Shown here: one piece after another, positions 18,636 to 64,000 of the stretch
Position numbering within the stretch: position 1 is the first letter of the stretch
Layout of the letters: every line of letters begins with the position of its first letter
The notes under the pieces: model-generated
Told to the model about the DNA's origin: nothing
Databases searched by the model: none
Seen by the model: only the letters and a program-made list of their open reading frames with translations
Source of the DNA: Macrostomum hystrix
Lineage: Eukaryota > Animalia > Platyhelminthes
DNA length: 64,000 nucleotides
Reading direction: 5' to 3'
NCBI GenBank assembly: GCA_950097015.1
Contig: CATNEN010000007.1
Location: forward strand, 2,852,001 to 2,916,000
Made by a program: the position numbers and the translations under genes

Positions 18636-18667
<32 letters not shown>

Positions 18668-39130: not shown

Positions 39131-39209
39131 CGAGTGCGTCAATGGGAAAAGCACGAGTGCGCGAAGCGTGCGTTATATTTCTACGCACTGTCTAGTCTAA
39201 TCTGCTTTC

Positions 39210-40365
39210 GAGCCGGCTTGTTTCGGTATTTCAGGCGTACGAGGGCCATTAACATCATTGAAGGTGAAAAGTTTCATATTGCGAATTTAGCCTTGAAGGC
39301 CGTTAGTCGAATGTTCCTAAAAAATGGCGGTCGCATTCGGCATTACGAAGCGATGGAGAAGGACGATCTGAACAAACTGTGGACGTACTTCGACCGCTCA
39401 AATGGGACGAAGCTTCTACACGAGGTGTACTTCATTCTGCTCTATTACTTCGGTCAGCGAGGTCGTGAATGGCTCCGATCGCTCAATGTCAACAGTCTGG
39501 TGTTTGAGTTGTGGAGTGGAGTGGAGACTGTGCGACTTAATGGAGGACTCGAGAAAACCGTCGGCACAAGACTATCGCCGGGCGCAATGGAAGACAATCG
39601 AGAAGCCATTGTGAAGTCGACCGGCGGAGAGCACTGCCCTGTGGCTGCGATCAAGTTGTACTTGGAAAAGCGGGAGGCTAGCCTTTCGGCTGGGACTTCC
39701 TAGAGTAACATGCCTCTGTTTCTTATGCCTAGCATCGGCAAAAAGGCTGCTCACTGGTACACAACAAAGCCAATGGGCGTGAATGCGCTTCAGAATCTGA
39801 TGGCCCGGATTTCAGCGACTGCACAGTTGTCCAAAGTCTACACTGGGCACAACGTTCGTCCAACCGTCATTTCTGAGTTGCACGAAGCTGGCTTTCGTTT
39901 GGAGCAGATCTGCAAAATAACTGGCCATAAAGACGTGAAGACTGTTCAGCGGTAAGTGTCAGCATCGGGCTGCCAATAAAATTCTCCTGTTTGTAGTACA
40001 TTGTGTACTTAAAAGTAAAAAAACATTTTTGTACGTACTTTCGTTAAGCTACTTAACAAATGGCAAGCGCAAGGCGAGTGAACTGGGCAAGATGTCCGAC
40101 GTGTTGTCAGCATCGCTGTTCGTCTTCCGCGACCAACGATAAGTCTGTGGCTATCGTCGGACCATCTGGTGATATGGATTCGGCGGGGGATGCTACGTCT
40201 ATCTCCGAGGTCCCAAAGCGGGTGGCAAGTGTCGGAATGACGACGTCAATCCAAAATGTCAAGGTTGACGTTCAAGCATCTTCGGCCGATACTGTTCGAC
40301 CGGAGCTACATATTCATCTGAGTGGTAGTTTCAGCAATTGCAACTTCAAATTCGGTGATCAGTGA
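39210..40365 (+). mobile_element. Crypton-type tyrosine recombinase pseudogene with an intron
   Basis: YFGQRGRE (first catalytic R), HCPV, GHNVRPT (HxxR), TGHK, then intron 39952-40048 (gtaagt...ttaag) restoring TVQR-Y-LTNG...MSDVLS. In-frame TAG at 39701, a frameshift near 40120, and a terminal FSNCNFKF motif. Confidence 0.8.
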
Positions 40366-40515
40366 GTACTGATGAGTACTGAGTGAGTTACTGAGTTTTC
40401 GAGTTACTACTAGAGCACTGACTACTAGACAAAGAGCTCGTTAAAAAAGTTCAACTATTTGCTACGTTTGCTTTTTGTAAAATATAAACGATGACACGAG
40501 CAATCATGTCGACTT

Positions 40516-40860
40516 CGCTGGAGTGCTTGTTGAATGTGTATCACCATTTTCTCCGTGACGTTTAGACGAAAAACTCGACCGTCGTTTAATTTTGATAAGA
40601 GAGCTTGATTTATATAGCGAGAGAAAATTTATAGTTGAAATCTTGAGAATAGTTTGTAAGCTTGGCTACCCTATGCGTTACTAAAAATATTTTCTCGTCG
40701 CTGTCTGGAGGGAGTCGCTAAATCAATTTTAAATAATTGTTCCTCTAGTACCTGTTTACTGCTAGTATATTAGCAACTTCTTTTAGAATCTAAAGTTGTT
40801 GAAACACAAAACTATTGATAGTTGTTAATAGATCGTGTTACAATAAGTTAATAAACTAAA
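40516..40860 (+). pseudogene. 3' remnant of a PAN-lectin gene (last ~13 codons) plus 3' flank; paralogue of 62463-62805
   Basis: GCTGGAGTGCTTGTTGAATGTGTATCACCATTTTCTCCGTGA (AGVLVECVSPFSP*) is identical to the end of the 61771-62505 gene, and the flank aligns for ~340 bp. Confidence 0.85.
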
Positions 40861-41156
40861 TGTTAGTCGAGACAAGCCAAGGCGAGAGTTTGCGATATGA
40901 CGAAAACCAACTGAGAAAAGCCAGGCGAAAGCGATGCGATAGTCAATATATTGTGGCTCAATAACACACTGGAGTTGAGCAGCCCCAACCCCAGGACTAA
41001 AACCAGCCATGTACATGCTAGATAAGATAAGCAATATAACGATAGCACGCGCACAGCAGGACTGAGAGCGATAACAAGTACATAGCCAGCAAGTCATAAC
41101 GCAACGCACAGTAAAGCCCGCCAAGCCCAGAGTCACGCAGAGTGAACAGTCTAATG
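40861..41156 (-). repeat. 3' LTR
   Basis: Matches 45215-45510 except for 3 internal substitutions and the inner terminal dinucleotide (CA instead of TG on the element strand). Confidence 0.92.
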
Positions 41157-41276
41157 CTGCTCTGCGCAGAAAACCCATAGACAAAAGCGCAAAACACAAA
41201 TGCAGCAAACATGAATAAAAAGAAATTAAAAGCAATTGAACAGTCCATTAAACAGTCCATAGTCATAAAAATCAAG

Positions 41277-44200: not shown

Positions 44201-45187
44201 ATCCGTGACTTCATTGACTTTAGTGGCGGCCTTCCAAGATCCTCCCGGATCCTTTTCGAGATGTCCTTCTCCATCTTCACCTGCTTGCTGTTGATTCGCA
44301 CCATGCAGAAGGCGGCCGGGCTGCCCTCGCCGCAGTAGAACACCGGATCGTCGCGGGTCACTACTGAGACGGCAACCCTTGGCTTCGGTCGGTGTGGCGA
44401 AGTGAGTCCTGGCGCTCCGACAGACCTTGGTGAAGTGGCCGTGTTTCCCGCACTGCTTGCAGGTGGCCTTCAGGGCCCAGCAGTCAGTAGGCCGGCGATG
44501 TGACATTCGGCCGCAGCGCTGGCAGCTTTGAGCCTCATTCGGCTGCCTCTGCTTCCACTTCTGAACTGCATTCACGCTATCCACTTCTAGCTCCTTTGAT
44601 GGCATCTCAGGTGTCAAGCTATCCATCTGGTGCACCGTGGAGTCCAGCGCAGCTGAGGCCCCTGACGAGAAAGTGCTCACCATCTGAAGCTGCTGAACAT
44701 AGTCGGTGATCTGGTCGACTGATAACGCAGCCGTGACCTCGCGCTCGAGAACCTTGCTCCTGACCTCCTGATTGTTGAGGCCGGCGATGAGTCGCATCTT
44801 GACCAGCTGCTCTGCTGGGTCAACGTCCTTGTCCTTCAGCTTTTCAAACTCGCACGCCACCGCCTGTTCTCGAAGACGGCTATGGTCTCGCCCTCGCCCT
44901 GGCGCAGGGACATCAAGGCCGCTCTCTCTGCGATCAGCAGCCTCTTCTGCGGTTCCAGAAACTTTACGAGACTCGACTTGATGTCGTTCCACTTCATCTT
45001 TGAAAGCTGACTAGGTGCAACCAGCTGCTTCACCTTGAGGCAGCCCAGGAAAGCGTCAGTCAGTGCCAGGTTGCCATCGGTGTCCTGAATTCCTTTTGAT
45101 CGCGCCTGTGCGTCAAAAACTTCAACCCATGCTCGCAGCTCATCTATGTTGCCGAGAGGCAATTGGGTCCCGCAGCTTGATTGACAT
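41277..45187 (-). pseudogene. gag-pol of the Gypsy element, disrupted
   Basis: ATG at 45187. Domains are split over ORFs 44836-45162, 44189-44992, 43834-44361, 43737-44138, 43419-43622, 42463-43542, 42077-42487 and 41277-41585, with stops at 43737 and 42077 and several frameshifts. Confidence 0.9.
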
Positions 45188-45214
45188 CCGATGATCCTGC
45201 TTGGGACGCCAAAA

Positions 45215-45510
45215 TGTTAGTCGAGACAAGCCAAGGCGAGAGTTTGCGATATGACAAAAACCAACTGAGAAAAGCCAGGCGAAAGCGATGCGATAGTCAA
45301 TATATTGTGGCTCAATAACACACTGGAGTTGAGCAGCCCCAACCCCAGGACTAAAACCAGCCATGTACATGCTAGATAAGATAAGCAATATAACGATAGC
45401 ACGCGCACAGCAGGACTGAGAGCGATAACAAGTACATAGCCAGCAAATCATAGCGCAACGCACAGTAAAGCCCGCCAAGCCCAGAGTCACGCAGAGTGAA
45501 CAGTCTAACA
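45215..45510 (-). repeat. 5' LTR
   Basis: TGTTAGAC...CTAACA termini on the minus strand, followed by the PBS-like sequence. Confidence 0.93.
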
Positions 45511-45712
45511 CTAAAGACTTGTTAAACTATTTAGCAACGAACACGCCAGTGAGAGGAACTAAGCGGTGAAAGAGGGCTGAACGAGTCATTCTTTTTAGGC
45601 AGAAGACTAAAGTTTTTCTATATTCTGAAAAAATAGACATGCTCGCATCAGAAGTCATAGCCCTATTTGATATCTAGAGTCTGCGCTCGGCAAATTCTTC
45701 AGAGCGTCTTGC

Positions 45713-46831: not shown

Positions 46832-47563
46832 ATGCTTCTTGCACTGTACCTGACTGCTAGCGCGTGTGCTGTGGCAGACGGAGCAGGAATTCACACAGCC
46901 ATTAGCGGACTGCAGTGCGTCAGACCCGAGTTTGTCGAGACTCACAGCAATGCGAAATCCAAGATCGAGTGCGCGAGTCTGTGCGATGCCAAGCACGACT
47001 GCCAGGCATTCAGTGTGGCCGACGGTCCGTGCCAGCTGTTCGTGTTCAACAGGTGCAGCAAGTACGTGAGAGACTGCAGCTGTACTCGCATCAAGCAGGT
47101 GTTTGTGAAGCAGCAGCCGGGACTGCCGCCCGGAGCTCTGTGTCCTGCCGGATTCGCTGACGACTTTTGCGGCACGAAGTACAAGTTCTACACCGGCATT
47201 CAAGACTGGAATGTCGCCAAAGCTGCGATTGACGCATTGCCAGGTCTCACAATCATGGCTGATGTTACAGACTCGATGGAGATGAGCCATTTAACTGGCT
47301 ACTTCTCGGCAAACAGCCTCGCAAACGTCATTCTCGGCGGCTGGCAGATTCCGGGCAGTGCGGAGCCATTTGACGGCTGGCAGTGGGTCGCCTGCAACTC
47401 CAGCGTCAGTCCCGCTCTCTGGGCCACCGGACAGCCGAGCAACGCAGGCGGTGCAGAGAACTACCTGTCCAGTGGGACTGCTTTTGGCAGTTTGAACGAT
47501 GGCAAAGTCTTCTCGTTTAATTATGACAGCGTTTTAGCCGAGTGCCGGTCGCCATTTGACTAG
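46832..47563 (+). CDS. Secreted PAN/apple + C-type lectin-like protein, copy 1 (243 aa)
   Basis: Signal-like MLLALYLTASACAVA at ATG 46832 (upstream in-frame ATG at 46730 is less likely). PAN spacing C-x17-CASLC-x5-CQAF-x6-CQL; CPAGF...CG; W.W...W..GQPSN...EN...LND...EC. Confidence 0.85.
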   Translation: MLLALYLTASACAVADGAGIHTAISGLQCVRPEFVETHSNAKSKIECASLCDAKHDCQAFSVADGPCQLFVFNRCSKYVRDCSCTRIKQVFVKQQPGLPPGALCPAGFADDFCGTKYKFYTGIQDWNVAKAAIDALPGLTIMADVTDSMEMSHLTGYFSANSLANVILGGWQIPGSAEPFDGWQWVACNSSVSPALWATGQPSNAGGAENYLSSGTAFGSLNDGKVFSFNYDSVLAECRSPFD

Positions 47564-48589
47564 TGTTCGAATATTTACAGTTTTTGGTCCGATACGAACC
47601 ATTGTTGCAGGGGTCTTGAAGGACATTGAAGGAACGCAAATCGATGACGGACGGAATTTGACTGTTTTAGCGGTAATAAGGAAGTTATAATAGAATCGAT
47701 TCGGACTCTTATGCGAAGGGAAACCTTACTGAGCTCCAGAATGAGCCGAGTGCATGAGTTGGTGTAGAATAGACTCCTGCGAGAATCAATGCGTTGTCTA
47801 GCCATAGCTCGTACGAGTGTAGTGCAGCTAAAGCATAGCAGTCTTACACTAAAGCTGCTCACTGCTTACTCATTTAGGCATTCATAGTTCAAGCAATCAA
47901 CAGAAAATCTGAAAGCTTCAAACACACATGGAGGAACTGTTAATGTGAGTAATAGCCATTCCGCTGTACAAGCCCCATACATCAATTAATCGCTAAAGAG
48001 ACCTTTTATACAGGTTTTTGTCTACCTGAGCCTCTGGAAGCATAAAGGTTTTTTATGAGACTTTCCGTTTCCTAACTAGACATAAATTTACATTAAAGTA
48101 AAGCAACCATCAGTTAAATAGGAAATCCAGTCGATTCATCGTAAATGCAAAAGTTTTAATAATTTAGAATATTGGGAGTTTCTATAGGGAACAAAAGGGA
48201 TTAGAGATAATGCCGGAAGTAAAAATGTTTTTAACAAATGAAGGCAGCATCATTTTATTATAACCCGACAACACCATCAGTTCCCGCTTAAGCAGTAGAT
48301 TTTGCTCAACAGGTTTGAGTGGCTCAGTCTGTCCCTACACTTTCCAGTATTTCTCGACTGATCGGACTTTCATCTGTAGAATGTATCAGCAGACAGCGGA
48401 TGTTGCAGGGAAAGTAAAGTGGACCTGGTGGCTAGAGGCGATGTCTGGATTGCTTAGTCCTATCTAGATGCTGTCGTGCCTACAGCATTGTCTGGATTGC
48501 TTAGTCCTATCTAGATGCTGTCGTGCCTACAGAATTGTTTTTCCCAGCCACATATAAAAAAATTAGTTTCCCACTATCCAACGTAATGT

Positions 48590-49086
48590 TGTAGCCTTGA
48601 ATCTTCGGTTGGAGTGTACCTTATAGGATACAAGCATACGAGTACTAACTCATGGGCCCTTGCTGGCCTGCGTCAGAACGCGAGCGCCCACAATCCCAAA
48701 TCGGAAGCTTCAGGACGCTCCCATGTGTTATGGCTCCCGTGTAGAGACGCATAAGTATCAGTAAACTTTCGCAAGGCGTCAGGACACACAAGCTAGCGAA
48801 TTAGTGCAGCGAGAGTACAGTAGGGAGAAATCCTTTGTCTGATCCTTGGCATAGCTCCCAGCTATAATAGTACGCGTCAGGATGCACGTGCTGTGCGTAC
48901 CCAGCTATGGCAACCGAAATAAACAAGATAAGGTGGCGATCTTCTTAGATGTAAACCTGGCTGAACCATTTATTTATCAAGTTTGGGCTCGCTAGGCGAT
49001 AAGTTGGGACTTCGCTGTGGCTGTCTTTCGGGAGCTTGCAGGGTGACCAACGTTCAGAGATCTCGAGAGAAATGCAGCGCACTACA
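48590..49086 (-). mobile_element. Possible solitary or terminal LTR
   Basis: TGTAG...CTACA inverted termini with a short GGGAGG purine run just upstream on the minus strand; no TSD found. Confidence 0.3.
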
Positions 49087-50569
49087 CCTCCCAGAGCCGC
49101 GCATCTTTTACCGCCACGGCTCATCTGGGGCCGGGGTACGCCCAAAATTCCACCCCAAAATCCTGCCCCCCAACCCTGCCACCCACTGGCAAATCACAGC
49201 GCAGCAGGGGGGAAGGCTGCCAAGGGCAAGAGCCAGACAGGGTGACAGCCAATCCGCTCGCAGTAAACAAGCGATTATGCACCGGGGGTAAATGATGCCT
49301 AGCAGAAAAGAAGTTTGTGCAAGACACAATGAGACGTGAGGCTTTGCACTCAACAGTGCTGATGCATTAAGGGGGGTACACGTGACGCATTACGCAGAGG
49401 AATGCAGGGTGTGCCTGCACTGTGAAGTGCACGAATGCAGCAATACACTCACTATAGAATTTATTGCTTTGAAAGATCCCCACGACTAACTGGAATCAGT
49501 GATTGGAATCAAGGAGGGCATCCTATGAACCCATCTTTGAAGTGTGAATTGCGGAGAATGCATAAGCTTTGAGAAAATTGACTCACAAATCACATACTCG
49601 TAGTTTTTACGGAGGAACAAAACTAATTTGAAAGCATTTGGATGCACAGAGGCAGCGGCTCATTAAAAAAGTATACGAGCTTGAAAATAATAAAAATCTG
49701 AGAAAACTCTGGAATACTTCCTCCCCCACAGCGAATCTGTGTAAAAAAACTAAGGTTTATTCACTATGCAAAGTATAATGCAACTAAAACTAGTTTCCGC
49801 TTTAATGGGAAGTAGCAAGACTGGTGTTCTGGAGTGAACAAAAAATCCTGCTCACAGAATGCAGCCAAGAACGGACGTTTGCTTTGGAAACATCGGCCGC
49901 CTTTCAACTCAATTCCAAGCCGTATGGAAAAGGAGATTGGACAAAAAGGACTAGGCGTTCTTTCAGATCGACATCTGGCTTTCTCAGCGTTTCATCGTTT
50001 TCGATGGCCTAATATCTGTTAAATATATATTCAAACAGGCACTGGTTAGCACACTTCTCTTAGCCTGAGCTATTATTATTATTATTATTATTACTAATGT
50101 GATATTACTAATGTGATATCCAGCAATTTGATTACATTTGATGGATGATTCACGAACAGATAGCTGTGAACAATTTTTTAACACCTAAGAATTTTCAACA
50201 GCTGTCAAACACCCAGTGTCTCATGGGAGATATAGGCGAATTCGCTATTAAAAAAATTCTGGCTGCAACCTGTACAGGATGGCGGCAGTCTTACGCGGTG
50301 AATTTCTTGAAAAAAAGTATATATTTGTTTCAAAAGCGAACATGATTTTGGGACAGAAGACCCACAAAAAGGGGCAATTCTACTCTTTACCAATTCTACT
50401 CTTTGCACATGGATACCATTCAGAGACACACACTCACAATGGGTGTAAATCTAACTAGAATATTTTGTCAGGCTGTTTACACTCTCATTGTGCCTTGAAC
50501 GTTGGCTCTTAACGGCGCAAACCGCACGATGAGCTACTCAAGCGCTCTCTCGGTGGCTGGGACTCAACA

Positions 50570-50640
50570 TAATCTGCACCTTCGCGGAATCCAGCTCAGA
50601 GACCTTGGTAGGACATTCAGTTAACCGCTCCGCTAATCAC
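50570..50640 (-). mobile_element. tRNA-derived SINE-like copy
   Basis: Minus strand GATTAGCGGAGCGGTTAAC...CAAGGTCTCTGAGCTGGATTCCGCG aligns with the 46.1-kb copy. Confidence 0.55.
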
Positions 50641-50930
50641 CCCTATCTCGCAAGAGAGGTGTAACTTTGAAGTTGAAACTTGTCATTTTTCACGTTTAAA
50701 GTTAGGTCTGTATAGGTAATTAAAACTGCTTTTGTCCAAGCGATTTTATAATCAGGGTGGCCTAGCAAATCAAATTTCACGACGATTGCAGGAAACTAAG
50801 CTATCGTTAAATTTTGATCCTATCTTGCCTAGCCCTACATAGTGTATATAGACACCATCGCAGAAGGATTTTCACGGAACTAACAACCTGCAAGCTTTGA
50901 AGCTCTCTAACTTGTGGACCATTGGGTGCA

Positions 50931-51662
50931 ATGAATTTCGTCTACTTTCTCATCGTCTTCGCAGTTGCCGAGGCCCGCGCTAGCACTTATTTTGAAATCG
51001 AAGCACTGCAATGTACCAGAGCCGACTTCCTGGAGACTCGCAGTGATGTCAAGTCCAAGATCGAGTGCGCGAGTCTGTGCGATGCCAAGCACGACTGCCA
51101 GGCATTCAGTGTGGCCGACAGTCCGTGCCAGCTGTTCGTGTTCAACAGGTGCAGCAAGTACGTGAGAGACTGCAGCTGTACTCGCATCAAGCAGGTGTTT
51201 GTGAAGCAGCAGCCGGGACTGCCGCCCGGAGCTCTGTGTCCTGCCGGATTCTCAGATAACTTGTGCGGCACAAAGTACCAGTTCTACGCTGATCTGAAGA
51301 ACTGGACTGTCGCCAAGGCTGCGTTCGACGCACTTCCAGGCCTCACAATCATGGCTGACGTTGCGGATCAAACTGAGATGAATCATTTGGGCTCCATGTT
51401 TTCTCGGGACAGTCGCACCAGAGTGCTTCTTGGAGGCTTTCAACTGCCGGGCAGTGCGGAGCCTTCTGGCGGATGGGTCTGGGCCAGCTGCAACTCCAGC
51501 ATCGGCAACAGCTTTTGGACCTCTGGTGAACCAAATAATGCTGGAGAAGTTGAGAATTATATCGTTAGTGGCACTGCGTACGGAGTCGGAATCAACGACA
51601 ATATGGAATACAAGTGGTACTTCGACGGCTCACTGGGAAAGTGCATCTCTCCGTTCGACTAG
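50931..51662 (+). CDS. Secreted PAN/apple + C-type lectin-like protein, copy 2 (243 aa)
   Basis: ATG at 50931 (track start is TTG); signal-like MNFVYFLIVFAVAEARA; same architecture; EPNN at the lectin Ca/sugar loop. Confidence 0.87.
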   Translation: MNFVYFLIVFAVAEARASTYFEIEALQCTRADFLETRSDVKSKIECASLCDAKHDCQAFSVADSPCQLFVFNRCSKYVRDCSCTRIKQVFVKQQPGLPPGALCPAGFSDNLCGTKYQFYADLKNWTVAKAAFDALPGLTIMADVADQTEMNHLGSMFSRDSRTRVLLGGFQLPGSAEPSGGWVWASCNSSIGNSFWTSGEPNNAGEVENYIVSGTAYGVGINDNMEYKWYFDGSLGKCISPFD

Positions 51663-52102
51663 CAGCCAAGAACGTTTAAATCTTATTGAAGCCCACGTAC
51701 TTACTAGCTAATCTCAGCTGGAAATCTAGAAACAATAATTTACGATCAAAATGGTAAGCAACGGACAGTCACACGTACGCAGTACAAAGTACACAGATCA
51801 ATAACGACACAATCAAAGTCTGTTTACATCTATCTGATGTAAAGTAAAAACTATCTTCATTTCATTTTCTAAACAACGGTCGTACTGCCAAAATTTATGG
51901 CTGTTTTCTTGTATGTAGCTTGTATGTAGTATGTAGATCGACTTTGAGAACTTCGGTAAACAGAGCTTCTAGCGAGATTGCGCTCTCAATTCTGCAATGA
52001 AAATATTTGTCCGTCCAAACCTTTTATGTCTCAAAACGAGGCCACAGCCCTGAAACTACAATGTACAGTTATCTATTTCAAAATGCTTTTGTTGAGACGC
52101 AA

Positions 52103-52165
52103 GTGCTGCTTCACAAACACCTGCTTGATGTGAATGGAGTTTCTCAAGTACTTGCCGCACCTGTT
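52103..52165 (-). pseudogene. Inverted fragment of the PAN-lectin conserved core
   Basis: Minus strand encodes NRCGKYLRNSIHIKQVFVKQH versus NRCSKYVRDCSCTRIKQVFVKQQ in the intact copies. Confidence 0.75.
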
Positions 52166-52299
52166 AAAAGTGTTTTAACAAAATGTTGAAGTATTTTATC
52201 CGACAAAAAAAATTAGTTTTTTTAGTAACTTAAGATAAAAAATGTTCATTAAAACAAAAAAACGTAATTTTTTTTTCGTTTTTCTCTTTTTAATGTTTG

Positions 52300-52468
52300 C
52301 AACTAGGCTAGTACTGAAGTCGGTGACTTATTACGGGATGAGTGAGCCGTGATGCATATCAAATACTGATAAAGACTTATTAAAGACTCTGACTGACCCC
52401 TGCCCTTCCGTTCTCTCTCCCAGACCCGCCATAAATCTCTTGGCGTTCAGTGATTTCTCAAACTTTCA
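52300..52468. repeat. Dispersed ~170-bp repeat, partial copy of the element at 56.2 kb
   Basis: ACTAGGCTAGTA.TGAAGTCGGTGACTTATTACGGGATGAGTGAGCC...CAAACTTTC is shared with 56201-56380. Confidence 0.85.
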
Positions 52469-52632
52469 ATAAAGAGATGGGGCGCAGTGTCTTTAATCAT
52501 TCGTCCAACTTTCTTTATTATCAATGCCCGCTATATCAAAGTCTAAATTTCTATCGTCTGCTAAAGTACGGCCCATTTCAATAAGCCATATATTTTAACA
52601 ACGCAAAGGAAAGGGACCCTCTGCACTGCGTG

Positions 52633-52730
52633 TAGGGGTCGCAATCCCGGGATCCCGGGATTCGGCCCCTTTTTCGAGATTTCTCAATCCCGGGATTCCG
52701 GGTCGGGATCCCGGAAAAGTCGGGATTTGA
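52633..52730 (+). mobile_element. Possible DNA-transposon/MITE terminus
   Basis: TAGGGGTCGCAATCCCGGGATCCCGGGATT followed by clustered ATCCCGGGAT palindromes; no matching opposite end seen. Confidence 0.35.
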
Positions 52731-53758
52731 TTAAGATAGAAAAATAATTTTTTTTAATCCATTTTCAGAACCAAATGCCATTGTTGTTGTTCAGAAAAAC
52801 ATGTATTTTCACAACCTCACCAAGCATCACATGCCATTAGATGCTAAAAATAGCCCAGGTCAGTGAGGTTGACGCTTAACAGCCTTAACGGCTTAAGTGT
52901 TAATCGAACTCTCCCGGGAATGCACACACTAATGTGATATTTTGACTTAGGTCTCTCTTTGCGTTGAGATCCCTAAATGAGGTCGGGTGTCCTACTCTTT
53001 GCGAGAGACTCTATTGCCGTGACTCGAAAATAACGAAGACAAGACGGTTCAGGATTCCAAGCTAAACAGCTGATAATTAAGTGTTAGTTAATTAACAAGA
53101 GAAGGCTATGGATGATTAATTCCCCTGGCAGCGCTCTTTCCGTCCCCTGCCAGGTACTGTACTTGATTAAATATTAGGCTCACAACCCGCACTGGTAAAT
53201 TACTAATAAAATCTCGGTAGCCTCAACACAAGAACACGCGAACTCTACTCGAAAATACTCTAGACACATACAAGAACTCACGAAAATAACGCGACAATTA
53301 ACACCTATACAAAAGCATAGTCCCTATGACAAAACAAGACAAATAATACAACCTAACCCAAAGTCCTTAGTCTGAACCGAGGCGACCAGCAAGCACTTCC
53401 GCACTATGGCACAACGATAGTTCTATCGTGCCCCACCTAATGTCAATTTGACGGCGTCCCACCGATGATGGTCGGCGAAATGGAGAGTACTTCCGTGCTT
53501 GCCAATCCCTATCTAACACTCCGTCAGCAGTTGGCCAGACGTACCGAGCTCAGCGCAAGCTACTTACTGACGTGGGATTGAGTGTGGGGTTTTCTTTGGC
53601 TAACTAGTTGGACCGGCTTACCTGTCCCGGTATCTATTACTAGGATGCGTTCAACGATTGCAACGAAGACGCACGAAAATGCACGCGAAAAGAGACACGA
53701 CGATGATACACACGATAAGACACACGACGATGAATCAAAATGACAACGCAATAGTCAG

Positions 53759-53930
53759 TTATATAGTCAAGCGCCCGCCCCAACCCTCATCAAAGCCTGG
53801 GTGCCGGCCGCGCCGCATGTTCTCCTGCCAGGTCGACCCTGCCGGTTAGCGAACTGACTGCTGATTGGCCCGGCCCGGGGTATCGCGCTTAAGTCGGTCG
53901 CATCAAATTGGCTAGCCGTCCTCCTATTGG
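53759..53930 (-). promoter_or_regulatory. Pol II promoter-like motif cluster, possibly the U3 of a long solo LTR
   Basis: On the minus strand: three CCAAT boxes (53930, 53911, 53868), a GGGGCGGGCG GC-box (53781-72) and TATATAA (53765-59), in the canonical order. Confidence 0.4.
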
Positions 53931-54162
53931 CTGGGCCCACCAGACCGGGGTCAGTCCAACGCCTTGGCTGTAGAGCAGGGTGACCGGCCGATCGCGTGCG
54001 TAGGCCTGGCTGGCGCGCATGTACAAAAACAACCCTGCTACAATAATTCATTAATGTTGAGTGCGCGAAAATGTTACTTCAAGTAGAAATATACGCATTA
54101 TAAAATAAACATGCCGACACTACACTAATGAAAATTGAAACCGAAATTTTATTAGTTGAAGC

Positions 54163-54421
54163 CACAGATACTATATTAAAGTTAATATAGTATCTGTGGA
54201 CCAAACCAATGCACATTTTCTTGAACTGATAACAGAGTCGTATGGGTCATGTGACTCTCTCTTTCTCGTTCTCGTTGTTGCAATCTTTAAACCACTTGAT
54301 TTGTTCATCCTTACAAAAAATACAAGCCATATTCTTTACTTGCTACCGAACAGAAAGTAGCTAAAATATTTAACAACATAAGTAAATGGAAGTGAACTAT
54401 CTAGTTAATATAGTATCTGTG
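54163..54421. mobile_element. 259-bp MITE with 17-bp TIRs and 8-bp TSD
   Basis: TIR CACAGATACTATATTAA / TTAATATAGTATCTGTG; TSD GTTGAAGC at 54155-62 and 54422-29; an uninterrupted paralogous site at ~54955-55020. Confidence 0.88.
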
Positions 54422-56155
54422 GTTGAAGCTTGACTTAGAAATAGAATACACAGGCTACAGCCCTCCATGCATTTGTCAGTGTTTGTTTGTGGGGACGAGA
54501 TTTCTGTCTATTGAGGTTTGAATGTAGATAAAGCCTCAAGGCTGTGCCGCCCGATCGATAAAAATCGAGGGGGAGGGGGTTCTCTCAGCCTGAGTGTCTG
54601 TGGCTTGAAGGGGGCCATCCAGCCCCTCCCTTTTGTTTAATGTACATGGCCCAGCTGAGATTGTCTTATCTAAGTACATGCAAGGTAAATTTTGTAAAAA
54701 CGATCTTGCGAATTTTTATATGTACAGAGACGAAATGTACCCAATACTATGCTGCATCGGATGAGCAGCTGCATTAGTGTTGGAAAATTCGATTTTTCGA
54801 AATGGAAGGCACATTGCAGCAATTTTGACACCCGGGGCCTATGCCAATTTCTCATAAGATTACTCATAAGATTTTAGTAGTGCAATTTCTCGAATCAAGT
54901 TTGGTGTCGTTGGATAGCATTTAGAGCCCTCTTCAAAAGGACAGCATCCACATAAAAATCGAAACCGAAATTTCATTAGTTGAAGCTTGACTTAAAATTA
55001 GAATACACGGGCTACAGCAATTTTACCTTGCAAAATTGCATGCTTTTTTTAATTTCTACGAAAACAACACGTTTTCCAACTGCAAATCAAGATTTAGCAT
55101 CTGGAATGTGACGCTGACTTTAAGTTGACATGTCATTCTCTTTCAAACATCCACATGCGTCTATTGAGACCATTTGCAGTTCAATACGACAAAGTGCACT
55201 ATCGTAGAGGCAGAAATGGCAAACTTTTTCTCTCATACGTACACCTGTACAGGTACATATTTTAGTACAGATGGCCAACTACTGAATGTGTGTACACGAG
55301 TCTAGTATCAAATGAAAGAGGGTCCTAATTGCAATTCAGCAACGCTTAGCGCAACACCAATGGATGCATCAATCAAAAGTTATGACTGATCCCGTTTTGC
55401 ATATTTAGCTCCCCGGGGGGGGTCAAAATTTGGGATTTTCGCATCCACCTTCGGGGCAAGTGGATGCTTAGAAAATTCAAAATATAAATTTTGTGCGCAC
55501 ATCTGTTGCGCTTCTAAAAACTGAAGCCGAATTCAAATCGCACACCAAATACGTTCTGGCCATGCAGTTTTGTACCTCGAAAAATGACTAAAAATGACCA
55601 AAATCACGTTTTTGGGATTTAATTACCCACATCTTCGGTAAACAACATCCAATCAGACTGAAACCAACATTTTCGGATAGGCGACACCCAAGAAAGTTGG
55701 TTGACATGTGTTGAAATGCAATTCAAGTCACCTGTCTGTGTCATAGAGGCGTCCAAAGTGCACACTGTACTAAAAGTAGTTTAAAAGTGCACATTTTTTT
55801 TCAATCATAAAAGTACACGGTCAAAAAATTTCTTCACCATCAAGTAGGCCCATGTGTTGGGGTTACGACCCAGCAAGTCAAAGTTTAAAAACATGCACAT
55901 TTTTTCAACCTCAAAAACCCGTTTTTTGACCCTTTGACCCAGAAGATGGGTCAGCAAGAAAAATTCCATATCAAATCATTGTAGGCTTCTATAGCTTGCA
56001 TCGACTGGATAGAGTCCAGACCGCATCCAAATCGGTTCAACTGGGCAAAAGCGGCAATCGTTAAAATTTGAAAGACGTGCTTTCCTATCCCGACACGTTG
56101 GCTACGTCTTATCAAGATGAGATATCGCATCCTTAATGCTCAAGAGAAGGACTCG

Positions 56156-56429
56156 CTTACGCTCGGCTTCCTCTTGGCCATTACTGGCTCACTCATCCCA
56201 ACTAGGCTAGTAATGAAGTCGGTGACTTATTACGGGATGAGTGAGCCGTGATGCATATCAAAGTACTGACTACTGATAAAGACTTATTAAAGACTCTGAC
56301 TGAGACTGACCCCTGCCCTTGTGTTCTCTCTCCTAGACCCGCCATAAATCCCTTGGCGTACAGTGATTTTTCAAACTTTCTTACGCTCGGCTTCCTCTTG
56401 TTCATTACTGGCTCACTCATCCCAACTAG
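56156..56429. repeat. Short element bounded by 50-bp direct repeats and containing 14-bp inverted repeats
   Basis: Direct repeats at 56156-56205 and 56380-56429 end in AACTAG; GGCTCACTCATCCC within them is the reverse complement of the internal GGGATGAGTGAGCC. Confidence 0.75.
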
Positions 56430-56895
56430 CTCGTATGCTTTCTTCGAATCAAGCCAAGTAACACCATAGAACTTATTCACCTGACTCTAGGTAGTCCTAA
56501 ATCAGCGCAGCATATTAGTGCTATTAAATTCTATTGTAGTCAGCTCAAAATCAGAGAAAGCTTGTTCAAAGCGGCTGCAAAGCGGGAGCGATGTTTGAAG
56601 TTAAAAAAGTTAAAAAACACATGCATGCATGATGAAAATGTGAATACAAAGCCTTGTTGAGCCTGAATATGCTGGAAAAACAGCATTTTAAGAGGTAAAA
56701 AACTGCAGCTCGCATTTCAGTTCTTAGCTTCCAGATCACAATTGAAAACATGGGTCTTGTGTTTATGCTTACCTGCAGGCACAATGCCGTGCAAAAAATG
56801 CCGAAGGAAAATATATTTAGACCTTTTTGCGACTGTCAAACAAAAGCATAAATGTGCCGACAAAACTGAAATACAAAAGCATCTGATTTCGGATC

Positions 56896-57672
56896 ATGGC
56901 GTCATCCATTGCCATGAAAATTTACTGTCGTCTGAGTATCGTCAGCCTAGTAATCGCAGCTGCTCGCTGCACAATGCCAAAGTGCCCTGCAAAGCGGCTG
57001 TTCCGCGAAACCCTGGGTCTACAGTGCCTGAGGCCTGAGTTCGTTCTGACGTACCAAGGACTGAAGTGCGTAACAGAGTGCGCGCTCTTATGCGATCGAG
57101 TCACTGATTGCCAGGCCTTCAGCATGGCCGATGGGCCGTGCCAGCTGTTCGTGTTCAACAGGTGCAGCAAGTACGTGAGAGACTGCAGCTGCACTCGCAT
57201 CAAGCAGGTGTTTGTGAAGCAGCAGTCGGGACTGCCACCCGGAACTCTGTGTCCTGCCGGATTCGCTGACGACTTTTGCGGTACCAAGTACAAGCTCTAT
57301 GAAAACTGGACCGACTGGGATTTGGCAAATGAGGCAGTCGATGCTTTGCCAGGCCTCACAATCATGGCTGACGTCACCGACCAGACTGAGATGGGCCATT
57401 TGCAAGCAGTTTTCAACCGGGATCGACTGACGAGGGTGATAATGGGAGGCATGCAGCTTCCAGGCAGCTCTGAGCCAGCCGGTGGATGGATCTGGGCCAG
57501 CTGCAACCTCAGCATCAGTGCCGACCTGTGGGCAGCAAAGCAGCCCAGCGATTTTGCCGGAATCGAAGATGTCGTAGTTGCTGGCTCGGACTTTCTGGGC
57601 TTGAACGACGGAAAGCGTTCGAAATCGATATTTGAAGGTGCATTTGTCGAGTGCGTGTCGCCGTTTAATTGA
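56896..57672 (+). CDS. Secreted PAN/apple + C-type lectin-like protein, copy 3 (258 aa; alternative ATG 56914)
   Basis: Hydrophobic LSIVSLVIAAARC leader, PAN cysteines, shared core, lectin-like domain with QPSD and LND. Confidence 0.85.
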   Translation: MASSIAMKIYCRLSIVSLVIAAARCTMPKCPAKRLFRETLGLQCLRPEFVLTYQGLKCVTECALLCDRVTDCQAFSMADGPCQLFVFNRCSKYVRDCSCTRIKQVFVKQQSGLPPGTLCPAGFADDFCGTKYKLYENWTDWDLANEAVDALPGLTIMADVTDQTEMGHLQAVFNRDRLTRVIMGGMQLPGSSEPAGGWIWASCNLSISADLWAAKQPSDFAGIEDVVVAGSDFLGLNDGKRSKSIFEGAFVECVSPFN

Positions 57673-57861
57673 AGCTGTGGACAGTCAATGTGTAAACTCA
57701 GTGCGTAATAGCCTAACAGGATGCTTAGAGAGAAAGGACTGCTAATTAGAAGGTGTCTTAACTTCATATCTATAAAATCTTGAGTATACAGATCGGCCAA
57801 AAATATGAATTTTAATAAACTGAATGTTTTTTGAGTGATTCTAATGTGCCAATGATCTAAT

Positions 57862-58935
57862 GATCAAGACGAAATCTGCGAGCCAACCGAGGAACCAGAA
57901 CCCCGCTAACCCTGTACGTGCGAATCGACGCGCGCCACCATCTCGATTTGAAGAGGGAGATGAGATGGAGCTTGACTGGTGGCTTGAATCGACTTGCTTG
58001 TTTAATTAACTTGAACTGACTTATTTACATCACCACATATTTACTATTCCTTTGTTCGTTTGTTTGAACCCACTGCAAGTTTGTGCTCATTCCTTTTCTA
58101 ATATAAGTAACTCCACTTGTCTACCTGTATGCGTGTTGGCCCACCAGCCCAAATATTTTCACCTTCCACCCTTCTCTTTTGATCGCTATAAAACACCTCG
58201 CAATTGCTGAGTCTCGCAAATATACCAAAGGAAATTCATCTCGTCTCTTTTTAGCAACAACGAAAACTAACGCCAACTTGGCGTACTTATTTGCGACACA
58301 ACACTTTTATATGTCTGGCCGGCGAGTAAAACGATTTCTTGGTAATGTTTATCATCAATTAGAAAGCAAAAGACTGCTTTGTATCTCAATTAATTTGTGT
58401 CTAGGTTTCAGAATAGAGTGAAACTCTTTCGTATTTGAAAGACGCATAGAATTCGGTAGTTTTCGTCAATAAAAACTGTTCTCGGTACTGAAAAATTCCC
58501 TCAAAAGACCGGTTTTTTCCGGTTTGAAAAAACTGATTTTGCGTCCCCAACTCGAACTCATCTGTGGGCGGAGCTGTCAATCAATAACTCATTGTTCTGT
58601 TTCTGGCCAAAATTTACCTTACAGGTAGCGTCTCCAGCCAAAAAAACACTAAAAAGAGATCTCGCACAGTGGCTCCAACGCATTGTAATCAAGTAAGCTT
58701 TCACAGATCAAGGCCCCTCAGCAGATAAAGGTTTTATCGTCCATTGTCTTTAAACGACGACGTAAATAGGCTTTGTGTATGTTACGCATCATCTATAGAA
58801 GTGCTGATTTTCATATTTAAAGAGCTAAACAAAACTTCCAGCTTTGTCTGCTTCAGTCCGAGTATTTATCCTCAAGTTAAAGTTTAAAAATCTCCCACTG
58901 GCTTCATAGGTGGCCAAGACTTAGACTCGTTTACA
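57862..58935 (+). repeat. Segmental duplicate of 60696-61770 (upstream region of lectin copies 4 and 5)
   Basis: Near-identical over ~1.07 kb; I counted only about ten differences by eye. Confidence 0.93.
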
Positions 58936-59664
58936 ATGCTGTTCCAACTGATAACTAGTTTAGCATTGCTGGCCACACCTGCAGCTAGCAGCGTATTCTA
59001 TGAAACAGTCGGGCAGCAGTGCATAAGAGCACAGTTCATGAGGTGCTTCATCAACATTTCGAGAAAGACGGAATGCGCCCTTCTGTGCGCCATTTCTACC
59101 GACTGCCAGGCATTCAGCGTGGCCGATGGTCCGTGCCAGCTGTTCGTGTTCAACAGGTGCAGCAAGTACGTGAGAGACTGCAGCTGCACTCGCATCAAGC
59201 AGGTGTTTGTGAAGCAGCAGTCGGGACTGCCACCCGGAGCTCTGTGTCCTGCTGGATTCGCTGACGACTTTTGCGGTACCAAGTACAAGCTCTATGAAAA
59301 CTGGACCGACTGGGATTTGGCAAAGGAGGCAGTCGATGCTTTGCCAGGCCTCACAATCATGGCTGACGTCACCGACCAGACTGAGATGGGCCATTGGCAA
59401 GCAGTTTTCAACCGGGACCGACTGATGAGGGTGATAATGGGAGGCATGCAGCTTCCAGGCAGCTCTGAGCCAGCCGGTGGATGGATCTGGGCCAGCTGCA
59501 ACCTCAGCATTAGTGCCGACCTGTGGGCAGCAAAGCAGCCCAGCAATGCCGGAATCGAAGATGTCGTAGTTGCTGGCTCGGACTTTCTTGGCTTGAACGA
59601 TGGAAAGCGTTCGAGTTCAAGATATGAAGGAGCATTTGTCGAGTGCGTGTCGCCGTTTAATTGA
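58936..59664 (+). CDS. Secreted PAN/apple + C-type lectin-like protein, copy 4 (242 aa), chimera of the copy 5 N-terminus and copy 3 C-terminus
   Basis: Protein is identical to copy 5 from the start to the core, then ~95% identical to copy 3 through the stop and 170 bp of 3' flank. Confidence 0.88.
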   Translation: MLFQLITSLALLATPAASSVFYETVGQQCIRAQFMRCFINISRKTECALLCAISTDCQAFSVADGPCQLFVFNRCSKYVRDCSCTRIKQVFVKQQSGLPPGALCPAGFADDFCGTKYKLYENWTDWDLAKEAVDALPGLTIMADVTDQTEMGHWQAVFNRDRLMRVIMGGMQLPGSSEPAGGWIWASCNLSISADLWAAKQPSNAGIEDVVVAGSDFLGLNDGKRSSSRYEGAFVECVSPFN

Positions 59665-60088
59665 AGCTGTTGACAGTGAATGTGCAAACTCAGTGCGTAA
59701 TAGCCTAACAGGATGCTTAGAGAGAAAGGACTGCTAATTAGAAGGTGTCTTAACTTCATATCTTTAAAATCTTGAGTATACAGATCGGCCAAAAATATGG
59801 ATTTTAATAAACTGAATGTTTTTCGAGTGATTCTAATGGCCTTTTATCTGTAAATTTTACAACAAGCTCCACTAGAACTGCTTATGACCTGCCCTAGTTC
59901 TCCGATCTCATATTTACCCACTGAAATTCACAGGAGCAATACATCAACATTATTTAAGAGCGTAAAATACTTTTTACCTGTCCAGTTAAGCAGTTTTCGT
60001 TCATATTTCATGTCTCATGTTCCATATCCTTCGAGCTCATGTAGAGCTCGTTTGAGATCAGGAAGCTGATAACATTGCCAAGGTCATC

Positions 60089-60800
60089 TTGATGGATGGC
60101 CATTCAACAGATGTGGATCTTCCACACCGTCAATCGTCTAGCGGGTGCTACAGGCTGTCTTCGAGAGAACCGGACTGCCCCACGTGCTGCGGAGCACCAT
60201 GGCGCAGATCTGCTCGCCTGGCTTTGGAGGATCGCTCTGCTAAGACGCCACCGAGACACCCGCAATCCAACGGCCTTGCGGACCGGATGTTCCAATCCGT
60301 CAAGAGAGCATCCTTGGACTCCTGAACTCCTGAATCCTTGGCTCCTGAACTACAGGTGCGCACCGCATGCGAGCCGGTTCAGAGCCCGACGCAACCCGAT
60401 CACGATGCAGACGCCAATTGGAGCGAGCGTCTGGCAAACGCCCGGGGGGCAAGCTGGCCCAAGAGCGAGTCGAGCTCGTGGCACAGAAGGGCACAAAAAT
60501 GCACAGAAGGGCACTAACACAGCACTGATCGCGCGACACGGAGGCCAGGTCACCCTGGCTCACGCTGACCAGCTGACTCACATCATCGAGAAGTGGCAGA
60601 CAGAGGAGGCACACCAGCTTGATGAGTCCGCCCTGCAGCAGCCCAGCGGTCCTGTTGAGCAGCAGCGAAGTCGGCAGCATCAACCGGACGGCCTCGATCA
60701 AGACAAAATCTGCGAGCCAACCGAGGAACCAGAACCCCGCTAACCCTGTACGTGCGAATCGACGCGCGCCACCATCTCGATTTGAAGAGGGAGATGAGAT
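60089..60800 (+). mobile_element. Degenerate Gypsy integrase 3' remnant
   Basis: TPPRHPQSNGLADR, LLNYRCAPHA, LAHADQL and RANRRAPPSRF motifs across shifted frames, followed by the purine tract GAAGAGGGAGATGAGA. Confidence 0.7.
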
Positions 60801-61770
60801 GGAGCTTGACTGGTGGCTTGAATCGACTTGCTTGTTTAATTAACTTGAACTGACTTATTTACATCACCACATATTTACTATTCCTTTGTTCGTTTGTTTG
60901 AACCCACTGCAAGTTTGTGCTCATTCCTTTTCTAATATAAGTAACTCCACTTGTCTACCTGTATGCGTGTTGGCCCACCAGCCCAAATATTTTCACCTTC
61001 CACCCTTCTCTTTTGATCGCTATAAAACACCTCGCAATTGCTGAGTCTCGCAAATATACCAAAGGAAATTCATCTCGTCTCTTTTTAGCAACAACGAAAA
61101 CTAACGCCAACTTGGCGTAGTTATTTGCGACACAACACTTTTATATGTCAGGCCGGCGAGCAAAAAGGATTTCTTGGAAATGTTTATCATCAATTAGAAA
61201 GCAAAAGACTGCTTTGTATCTCAATTAATTTGTGTCTAGGTTTCAGAATAGAGTAAAACTCTTTCGTATTTGAAAGACGCATAGAATTCGGTAGTTTTCG
61301 TCAATAAAAACTGTTCTCGGTACTGAAAAATTCCCTCAAAAGACCGGTTTTTTCCGGTTTGAAAAAACTGATTTTGCGTCCCCAACTCGAACTCATCTGT
61401 GGGCGGAGCTGTCAATCAATAACTCATTGTTCTGTTTCTGGCCAAAATTTACCTTACAGGTAGCGTCTCCAGCCAAAAAAACACTAAAAAGAGATCTCGC
61501 ACAGTGGCTCCAACGCATTGTAATCAAGTAAGCTTTCACAGATCAAGGCCCCTCAGCAGATAAAGGTTTTATCGTCCATTGTCTTTAAACGACGACGTAA
61601 ATAGGCTTTGTGTATGTTACGCATCATCTATAGAAGTGCTGATTTTCATATTTAAAGAGCTAAACAAAACTTCCAGCTTTGTCTGCTTTAGTCCGAGTAT
61701 TTATCCTCAAGTTAAAGTTTAAAAATCTCCCACTGGCTTCATAGGTGGCCAAGACTTAGACTCGTTTACA

Positions 61771-62505
61771 ATGCTGTTCCAACTGATAACTAGTTTAGCA
61801 TTGCTGGCCACACCTGCAGCTAGCAGCGTATTCTATGAAACAGTCGGGCAGCAGTGCATAAGAGCACAGTTCATGAGGTGCTTCATCAACATTTCGAGAA
61901 AGACGGAATGCGCCCTTCTGTGCGCCATTTCTACCGACTGCCAGGCATTCAGCGTGGCCGATGGTCCGTGCCAGCTGTTCGTGTTCAACAGGTGCAGCAA
62001 GTATGTGAGAGACTGCAGCTGCACTCGCATCAAGCAGGTGTTTGTGAAGCAGCAGTCGGGACTGCCACCCGGAGCTCTGTGTCCCGCCGGATTCGCTGAC
62101 GACTTTTGTGGCACCAAGTACACGCTGTACTCTGGAATCGCAAAATGGGACTTAGCCAAGGCTGCTGTGGATGCGCTGCCCGGCCTCACAATCATGGCTG
62201 ATGTAACTGACCTGACGGAAATGACTCACATTAATGCAATCGTGACCAGGGACAATCTGAGGAAAGTAATCACAGGAGGCTGGCAGGCCCCAGGCAGCTC
62301 TGAGCCAGACGGTGGTTGGATCTGGGTGGTCTGCAACTCCAGCATCGACCCGAGTCTCTGGGCTGCACAGCAGCCCAGCAACTATTTAAATAAGGAGAAC
62401 TATGTGTCCATCGGGTCGGGCGCATTCGGGCTGAACGATGACTCGAGAACTCATGTCCTCTACGCTGGAGTGCTTGTTGAATGTGTATCACCATTTTCTC
62501 CGTGA
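61771..62505 (+). CDS. Secreted PAN/apple + C-type lectin-like protein, copy 5 (244 aa)
   Basis: Signal-like MLFQLITSLALLATPAASS; same architecture; QPSN and LND. Confidence 0.88.
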   Translation: MLFQLITSLALLATPAASSVFYETVGQQCIRAQFMRCFINISRKTECALLCAISTDCQAFSVADGPCQLFVFNRCSKYVRDCSCTRIKQVFVKQQSGLPPGALCPAGFADDFCGTKYTLYSGIAKWDLAKAAVDALPGLTIMADVTDLTEMTHINAIVTRDNLRKVITGGWQAPGSSEPDGGWIWVVCNSSIDPSLWAAQQPSNYLNKENYVSIGSGAFGLNDDSRTHVLYAGVLVECVSPFSP

Positions 62506-62949
62506 CGCTTAGACGAAAAACTCGACCATTGTTTGATTTTGATAAGAGAGCTTGATTTATATAGCGAGAGAAAATTTATAGTTGAAATCTTGAGAATAGT
62601 TTGCAAGCTTGGCTACCATATGCCCTACTGAAATTATTTTCTCGTCGCTGTCTGGAGTGAGTCACTAAATCAATGTTAAATAAATGTTCCTCTGGTACCT
62701 GTGTACTGCTCGAATATTAGCAACTTTTTTAGAATCTCTGGTTGTTGAAAAACGAAACTATTGATAGCTGTTCATAGGTCGTGTTACAATAAGTAATAAA
62801 CTAAAGACTTATTAAACTATTTAGCAAAGAAAACATAAGGTGAGAGGAACTAAGCGGTGAACGAGGGCTGAACGAGTTATTCTTTTGAAGCAGAAGTATG
62901 CAAAAAGACTAAAGTTTTTCTAAATTCTGAAAAAATAGACATGCTTGCA

Positions 62950-64000
<1,051 letters not shown>

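What the first reader, a model, noticed from the sequence alone, without database searches (positions are those of the whole stretch)
46832..62505. Mix-and-match secreted PAN-lectin cluster: invariant hinge joining exchangeable N- and C-terminal modules
Seen: five intact intronless genes share a ~170-nt block (DCQAFS...CPAGF.D; e.g. 46998-47165, 59101-59270) that is almost identical even at synonymous sites. The flanking modules are far more divergent. The N-terminal PAN half comes in three types (copies 1+2, copy 3, copies 4+5; copies 1 and 2 have different signal peptides). The lectin domain comes in four types (1, 2, 3+4, 5). The five genes are therefore five different N x C pairings. Inference: recombination or gene conversion through the conserved block reshuffles the modules, a germline combinatorial diversification that would suit innate-immune, mucus or adhesion recognition. 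I do not recall a described family with this PAN + Cys-poor C-type lectin layout, but I could not search.
Basis: partly seen in the sequence, partly recalled or inferred. Interest (0 to 1): 0.85.

Follow-up and report, generated by a model that had tools for sequence, protein, structure and literature searches.

The report
Flatworm lectin cluster with one chimera
Five neighbouring secreted lectin genes of a Macrostomum flatworm are four old, diverged copies whose central 160–200 bases are kept nearly identical by gene conversion, plus one hybrid gene formed by recombination inside that shared stretch; this is a clean but familiar kind of gene-family evolution, not a module-shuffling system.

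Summary
Observation largely confirmed. Five intact intronless ORFs encode signal peptide + PAN/apple + C-type lectin (AlphaFold pLDDT 97; lectin fold Z 17.7). A 53-codon core has pS 0–0.19 against about 0.7 elsewhere (same-amino-acid codon test p 5e-4 to 5e-9). The core is ordinary in relatives: 53–69% amino-acid identity, synonymous sites diverged. M. lignano tandem copies have their own identical core. This is region-limited concerted evolution, not an invariant signal. The combinatorial reading mostly fails. Copy 4 is the only demonstrable chimera (5' from copy 5, 3' from copy 3; 15 and 44 informative sites, none conflicting). Copies 1, 2, 3 and 5 give the same split in every segment that has signal; copies 1 and 2 only share a conversion tract 39 nt longer. 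The 'hinge' is the second half of the PAN domain, the linker and the start of the lectin domain. PAN+lectin proteins are common in molluscs. The host is a non-lignano Macrostomum. The scan has noted the same pattern before on other DNA of this genome, in lectin and housekeeping genes alike.

The parts
46832..47563 (+). Copy 1: secreted PAN + C-type lectin ORF, 243 aa (in-frame upstream ATGs at 46730 and 46799; 46832 fits the signal peptide)
46958..47155 (+). Homogenised tract of copy 1; 1 mismatch in 198 nt to copy 2 (core proper 46997-47155)
50931..51662 (+). Copy 2: 243 aa; EPN-type sugar-site motif; modelled with pLDDT 97
51054..51251 (+). Homogenised tract of copy 2 (core proper 51093-51251)
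52104..52168 (-). Inverted, degenerate 65-nt copy of the most invariant part of the core (about 82% identical, 27 nt perfect, 6-nt deletion), about 440 nt after the copy-2 stop
   Evidence: nhmmer E 1.3e-15
56896..57672 (+). Copy 3: 258 aa; source type of the lectin half of copy 4
57106..57264 (+). Core of copy 3
57136..57846 (+). Copy-3 core, lectin domain and 3' flank, duplicated at 59131-59838 (22 substitutions + 1 codon indel, 3.2%)
57847..57861 (+). 15-nt filler at a non-homologous junction; the copy 3-4 spacer lacks 857 nt (59839-60695) that the copy 4-5 spacer has
57862..59130 (+). Copy-5-type upstream region, signal peptide and PAN front half in copy 4, matching 60696-61965 (8 substitutions + 1 indel in the 1236 nt up to 59097, 0.7%)
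58936..59664 (+). Copy 4: chimeric ORF, 242 aa, copy-5 front and copy-3 lectin domain; switch point between 59131 and 59277
59101..59259 (+). Core of copy 4 (contains the recombination junction)
61771..62505 (+). Copy 5: 244 aa; source type of the front half of copy 4
61936..62094 (+). Core of copy 5
40485..40857 (+). Remnant of a sixth, copy-5-like gene: last ~25 codons and 3' flank, 91% to 62434-62805; continues at 45510-45656 after an inserted LTR retroelement

Best explanation
This is a lineage-specific tandem family of small secreted PAN/apple + C-type lectin proteins in a non-lignano Macrostomum. Four copies (1, 2, 3, 5) arose by old duplications and are near saturation at synonymous sites. 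Their central 53 codons carry 7 of the 12 conserved cysteines and the PAN-lectin junction, so they are under stronger purifying selection than the rest (shown by cross-species identity). That kept them similar enough to go on pairing, and recurrent gene conversion between neighbours keeps resetting the block (pattern shown, mechanism inferred). The ligand-facing PAN front and the sugar-binding loops diverged past the point where conversion works, or conversion there is selected against (inferred). As a by-product the block is the only place where these genes can recombine homologously. One such event made copy 4: copy-5 promoter, signal peptide and PAN front fused to a copy-3-type lectin domain (shown in sequence). 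The likely effect is a copy-3-like binding site under copy-5 control. The proteins probably act as Ca2+-dependent glycan-binding molecules in mucus, gut or epidermis, with different specificities (EPN in copy 2, QPS in the others; inferred from motifs only).
For: Synonymous deficit confined to the core with sharp edges. Neighbours share more: 1=2 over 198 nt, and five diagnostic core sites split 1,2 from 3,4,5. Across lineages the core is only 53-69% identical in protein, and third-position differences are 0.45-0.58 against L003 and L011, as in the lectin part, so there is no deep nucleotide constraint. M. lignano tandem units in P0004 show the same profile with a different core sequence: N 79%, core 100%, lectin 70%. 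Three other M. lignano relatives share their own core type (76-82% to each other against 33-45% in the lectin part). No Rfam hit and no unusual RNA fold (z -1.3 to +0.2). Copy-4 chimera: 15 N sites group it with copy 5, 44 lectin sites with copy 3, none conflict, and the flanks follow the same pattern. The process is textbook (PMC3924837, PMC3966226).
Against: No true orthologues from a close sister species, so conversion could not be dated on a species tree. M. lignano evidence is protein-only, from imperfect gene models. One relative (L001) has somewhat lower third-position divergence in the core (0.25-0.35) than in the lectin part (0.36-0.52), so some nucleotide-level constraint is possible. 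The two duplicated halves of copy 4 differ in age (3.2% against 0.7%, p 5e-5), so one simple unequal crossover is not sufficient: a two-step origin or later conversion is needed. No reads could be checked. Function is untested.
Confidence: 0.75

Rival explanations
1. Selected germline mix-and-match system: the core is maintained as a recombination cassette and crossovers through it repeatedly generate new front x lectin pairings that are favoured for recognition diversity.
For: One real chimera with an intact frame. A sixth-gene remnant and an inverted core fragment show turnover. Five of the eight amino-acid differences plus the codon deletion between copies 3 and 4 cluster around the predicted sugar site. 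Unchecked notes report several similar clusters in this genome.
Against: Only 1 of 5 genes is recombinant; the other four are congruent. The pN/pS of lectins 3 and 4 is about 0.4, with no sign of positive selection. A different core sequence is homogenised in M. lignano. Unchecked notes report the same mosaics in housekeeping paralogues.
Confidence: 0.12
2. Copy 4 is an assembly artefact: two haplotypes of the core3-to-core5 unit were joined in tandem through the repeated core.
For: The duplicated unit begins and ends in the core repeat, and its two copies differ like alleles (0.7-3.2% plus an 857-nt indel). Published Macrostomum assemblies reported separately assembled haplotypes (PMC10468722).
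Against: The unit is only 2.0-2.8 kb, well inside long-read span if this is a long-read assembly (not known for certain). The divergence step coincides with a filler junction, which is easier to explain as a real rearrangement. This rival would not touch the homogenised core of the other four genes.
Confidence: 0.1
3. The core is held constant by nucleotide-level selection, for example as the target of an antisense or small RNA from the inverted fragment at 52104-52168, which may lie in the 3' UTR of copy 2 and could co-regulate all copies.
For: The fragment matches exactly the most invariant stretch, with 27 nt perfectly complementary to all five genes. It lies before the first polyadenylation-like hexamers after copy 2 (52248, 52468) and folds into a long stem.
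Against: The fold is not significant (z -1.6 to -1.7) and has large bulges. A 22-30 nt target cannot explain 160-200 nt of identity or its neighbour-wise hierarchy. Synonymous sites of the core are not conserved across lineages. No Rfam hit.
Confidence: 0.05
4. Simple duplication with strong purifying selection on the core protein, and no conversion.
For: The core is the most conserved part of the protein across species (65-69% against 36-42%).
Against: It cannot explain the absence of synonymous change (four-fold sites, p 7e-3 to 8e-5). GC3 differs only mildly (0.75 against 0.61).
Confidence: 0.03

Closest known systems
Domain-limited gene conversion in clustered protocadherins (Noonan et al. 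2004, as reviewed in PMC3966226)
   Same: Tandem paralogues in which one domain-sized segment is homogenised lineage by lineage while the rest stays divergent.
   Different: Here the genes are whole intronless secreted lectins, with no constant exon and no promoter-choice or splicing combinatorics; the tract straddles two domains.
Conversion-versus-selection mosaics such as RHD/RHCE and red/green opsins (PMC3924837, PMC3966226)
   Same: Sharp alternation of low and high synonymous divergence; conversion stronger between near neighbours; chimeric copies as a by-product.
   Different: Inverted proportions: a small island of identity in mostly saturated genes, not a small peak of divergence.
Chimeric genes from unequal crossover (haemoglobin Lepore/anti-Lepore, glycophorin hybrids, plant Cf-4/Cf-9-type R genes; from my own knowledge)
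   Same: An extra hybrid gene sits between its two parents, with the 5' part of the downstream gene and the 3' part of the upstream gene (anti-Lepore geometry).
   Different: The two halves have different divergence and there is a filler junction, so the history is two-step or overwritten.
Invertebrate PAN/apple + C-type lectin proteins (ESM Atlas cluster of 231 aa, Lectin_C 96% + PAN_1 39%, 326 members, mostly Mollusca; M. lignano UniRef A0A1I8HTM9, A0A1I8H311, A0A1I8H3Z5)
   Same: Same architecture and size; M. lignano relatives are 39-46% identical and share the extra-Cys PAN core.
   Different: These five have lost the helix-1 Cys with its partner, the Cys pair of the binding loop, and the Trp of WND; they fall below Pfam cut-offs. 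I found no paper that describes the Macrostomum family.
Diversified invertebrate immune families (SpTrf/Sp185-333, FREPs)
   Same: Clustered, secreted, recombination-prone genes (PMC1988830, PMC5103432 seen in the search lists; not read).
   Different: No mosaic element patterns, no flanking microsatellites, no evidence of somatic change or immune induction.

Membership tests
C-type lectin-like domain | CTLD fold | tested here: met
   Model pLDDT 97, pTM 0.91; Foldseek probability 1.0 to CEL-I, langerin, codakine; Z 17.7, rmsd 2.2 over 126 residues
C-type lectin-like domain | Pfam Lectin_C above cut-off | tested here: not met
   No hit at E<=1; distant homologues do pass
C-type lectin-like domain | Canonical C1-C4 and C2-C3 disulfides | tested here: not met
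   Helix-1 Cys and the first Cys of the terminal CEC motif are both lost, while most relatives keep them
Ca2+-dependent sugar-binding CRD | Site-2 residues (EPN/QPD, Glu, xND) | tested here: inconclusive
   EPN in copy 2, QPS in the others; Glu and L/I-N-D kept in all five; binding not tested
PAN/apple domain | CxxxC...C...C pattern, beta-alpha-beta layout, profile similarity | tested here: met
   Profile hits to MIC5, MIC4, factor XI apple and HGF N domain, E 3e-5 to 7e-4; PAN_1/PAN_4 hits across members; secondary structure. Single sequences are below Pfam cut-off
Secreted protein | Signal peptide, no membrane anchor | tested here: inconclusive
   Hydrophobic N-termini and no C-terminal hydrophobic stretch by eye; no predictor available
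Region-limited concerted evolution | Local deficit of synonymous divergence between old paralogues | tested here: met
Region-limited concerted evolution | Segment groups by genome or neighbourhood, and differs between lineages | tested here: met
   no strict one-to-one orthologues were available
Chimeric gene by crossover | Colinear switch of ancestry including flanks | tested here: met
Chimeric gene by crossover | Equal divergence of both duplicated halves (single event) | tested here: not met
   3.2% against 0.7%, p 5e-5
Chimeric gene by crossover | Present in raw reads | not testable with these tools
Combinatorial diversification system | Repeated independent N x C reassortments | tested here: not met
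   Only copy 4 is incongruent
Combinatorial diversification system | Dedicated signal or recombinase, somatic variants, immune induction | tested here: inconclusive
   No flanking repeat signal; the core sequence differs between subfamilies; somatic and expression data were not available

The most novel reading that the evidence does not exclude
Macrostomum PAN-lectin clusters keep a conversion-homogenised, disulfide-rich core that works as a standing recombination cassette. Across the many clusters and across individuals, crossovers through it reassort promoter/PAN fronts with lectin binding domains often enough to be a selected source of recognition diversity, possibly with cluster-wide control by an antisense core fragment.
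Probability: 0.12. Interest if true: 0.7.

Novelty: new member of a known kind. Interest (0 to 1): 0.33.

Why it matters
It is a compact, well-resolved example of how selection on a structural core sustains gene conversion, and how the converted island then becomes the only site for domain-swapping recombination, with a hybrid gene lying between its parents. It also flags an undescribed, expanded lectin family in a model flatworm whose immune and mucus effectors are little known. If population data showed frequent reassortment, it would give a testable route to recognition diversity in flatworms. On present evidence it is ordinary gene-family dynamics.

Tried and rejected
The first AlphaFold run with 8 sequences failed (pLDDT 43); 120 sequences fixed it. 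A single-sequence homologue search with copy 2 found nothing. P0001 has no contig on record. The fetched M. lignano loci (L002, L006-L011) held only distant relatives (an intron-containing gene and near-identical TSP1-fused copies), so no DNA-level test in M. lignano was possible. The run-length permutation test flags only pairs 1-2, 3-4 and 4-5 strongly, because it ignores sites invariant in all five; the synonymous-site test was the informative one. Rejected: structured RNA in the core; codon bias; overlapping antisense ORFs (their ends differ between copies); microsatellite-driven rearrangement; a role for the nearby tyrosine-recombinase remnant (broken, 7 kb away); the host being M. lignano (neighbouring GPCR 72% identical). 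The Fisher test used slightly miscounted totals; one search is the corrected one. Paper searches found no description of the family.
Full report
Setting. The window is animal DNA rich in simple repeats. All close relatives of the five proteins are Macrostomum lignano proteins or Logan transcripts at 39-46% identity. A neighbouring GPCR is 72% identical to its M. lignano relative. The host is therefore another Macrostomum species. M. hystrix and M. cliftonense have published long-read assemblies (PMC10468722), but I did not determine the species. Nothing here looked human.

The genes. Five intact intronless ORFs lie on the + strand: 46832-47563, 50931-51662, 56896-57672, 58936-59664 and 61771-62505. 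Pfam gives only sub-threshold PAN hits and no Lectin_C hit. An AlphaFold model of copy 2 built on 120 sequences has pLDDT 97 and pTM 0.91. Its residues 84-223 match C-type lectin domains (Foldseek probability 1.0; Z 17.7 to codakine). The fold searches did not test the N-terminal 80 residues. A profile of that part matches solved apple/PAN domains (MIC5, MIC4, factor XI, HGF; E down to 3e-5). The lectin domain has lost the helix-1 Cys together with its terminal partner, but keeps candidate Ca2+ site residues: EPN in copy 2, QPS in the others, a Glu and an xND in all. The PAN+lectin layout at about 230 aa is common: an Atlas cluster of 326 mostly molluscan proteins has it, and several distant hits carry both Pfam domains. 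I found no paper on the Macrostomum family.

The shared block is real. Over 53 codons from DCQAFS to CPAGF the genes are 93-99% identical with pS 0-0.19. The lectin domain has pS 0.66-0.78 and the distinct N parts 0.7-0.8. Among codons that keep the same amino acid, third-position differences are far rarer in the core (p 4.6e-4 to 5e-9), also at four-fold sites alone. Edges are sharp. The block is not a hinge. It spans the second half of PAN, the linker and the lectin N-terminal hairpin, and holds 7 of the 12 conserved cysteines. Patterns of Cys loss in two distant relatives hint at disulfides between PAN and lectin domains; this is inference, as I could not read the model's coordinates.

Why it is constant. 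Across lineages the core is the best-conserved part of the protein, but far from invariant: 53-69% identity, with third positions as diverged as in the lectin part for two of three relatives and a little less for the third. M. lignano proteins share their own version of the core (76-82% among three of them against 33-45% in the lectin part). Two tandem units inside the fused model P0004 are 100% identical in a quite different core, but 79% and 70% on either side. Within the window neighbours share more: copies 1 and 2 differ at one site in 198 nt, and five sites separate 1,2 from 3,4,5. No RNA family or unusual fold explains it. This is the known pattern of conversion persisting where selection keeps paralogues similar and failing where they have diverged (PMC3924837; the protocadherin case in PMC3966226).

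How much mixing. Copy 4 is a chimera. Its 1.2 kb upstream region, signal peptide and PAN front match copy 5 (314 nt identical across the start codon). Its lectin domain and 175 nt of 3' flank match copy 3. Fifteen informative sites in the N part group it with copy 5 and 44 in the lectin part with copy 3, with none conflicting. The switch lies between 59131 and 59277. The halves differ in age (3.2% against 0.7%, p 5e-5), and the step coincides with an 857-nt deletion and a 15-nt filler at 57846-57862. A two-step history, or a crossover followed by later conversion, fits better than one clean unequal crossover. A false duplication of two haplotypes cannot be excluded without reads. The other four genes show no swap. 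Copies 1 and 2 differ at 31 of 75 nt in the front and share only a 39-nt extension of the converted tract. The split (1,2)|(3,5) is found in the distal N part (6:0:0 sites), the core (5:0:0) and the lectin tree (83% support, although site counts there are nearly star-like at 21:12:19). So there are four old paralogues and one hybrid, not a grid of exchanged modules. Between copies 3 and 4 pN/pS is about 0.4, but most amino-acid changes sit around the predicted sugar site.

Surroundings. An inverted, degenerate 65-nt copy of the most invariant core stretch lies at 52104-52168, possibly within the 3' UTR of copy 2. It may be a dead paralogue visible only through its core, a captured repair fragment or, less likely, a source of antisense RNA; its hairpin is not significant. 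A 3' remnant of a copy-5-like sixth gene lies at 40485-40857 and 45510-45656, split by a broken Gypsy-type LTR retroelement with a 5-bp target duplication.

Earlier notes of the scan. Another reader noted the copy-4 chimera (s1-410625); I had recorded it as my reading before seeing that note. Other notes describe homogenised cores in further PAN-lectin clusters and in unrelated paralogues such as TPMT, HHAT, VPS4 and EGFR. These are unchecked leads, but they suggest a genome-wide tendency, not an immune-specific device.

Verdict. The mechanism is region-limited gene conversion plus one recombination-made hybrid gene (confidence 0.75). A selected combinatorial system remains possible at about 0.12. 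It is a new member of a known kind; interest 0.33.

Noticed in passing
window 52104-52168 (-): Inverted degenerate copy of the most invariant core stretch, 27 nt perfectly complementary to all five genes, upstream of copy 2's first polyadenylation-like hexamers (52248, 52468); forms a weak long hairpin on the + strand.
   Followed up: partly
window 40485-40857 and 45510-45656: 3' remnant of a sixth, copy-5-like gene with its flank (91% and 85% to 62434-62958).
   Followed up: partly
window 40858-45508: Broken Gypsy-type LTR retroelement on - (LTRs 40858-41154 and 45212-45508, 99% identical; 5-bp target duplication; RT, RNase H and integrase pieces in separate frames).
   Followed up: partly
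window about 39086-39955 (+): Broken tyrosine-recombinase gene (Phage_integrase E 2e-7, weak DUF3504), Crypton-like transposon remnant; pieces searched apart.
   Followed up: partly
window 62950-64000 (-): Beta-tubulin-like sequence with frameshifts and stops, no obvious introns: probable pseudogene next to copy 5.
   Followed up: no
window 59839-60743: 857-nt stretch absent from the copy 3-4 spacer; holds most of a 215-aa ORF (60096-60743) with no Pfam hit.
   Followed up: partly
window 58286-58343 vs 61120-61178: Five substitutions and one indel clustered in 60 nt within an otherwise about 99.7% identical duplicate; looks like a micro-conversion tract from another source.
   Followed up: no
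window 18540-19931 (-): Intronless Srw/rhodopsin-type GPCR, 72% identical to an M. lignano protein; used to place the host.
   Followed up: partly
window 34590-35909 (+): 439-aa open frame without a Pfam hit.
   Followed up: no
P0004 (M. lignano UniRef A0A1I8H3Z5): A 3072-aa gene model that fuses at least four tandem PAN-lectin units; two neighbours have identical cores with diverged ends.
   Followed up: partly
P0010 residues 197-360 (M. lignano): Frameshifted model holding the closest relative of this subfamily: it also lacks the helix-1 Cys and shares a copy-3-like motif after the WxxC segment.
   Followed up: partly
L006-L011 (M. lignano contigs): The same PAN-lectin module is fused as a last exon to TSP1 repeats in several near-identical copies, many with the same frameshift.
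   Followed up: no
window 52300-52467 and 56199-56380: Dispersed ~170-nt repeat (88% identical) in the copy 2-3 spacer.
   Followed up: no
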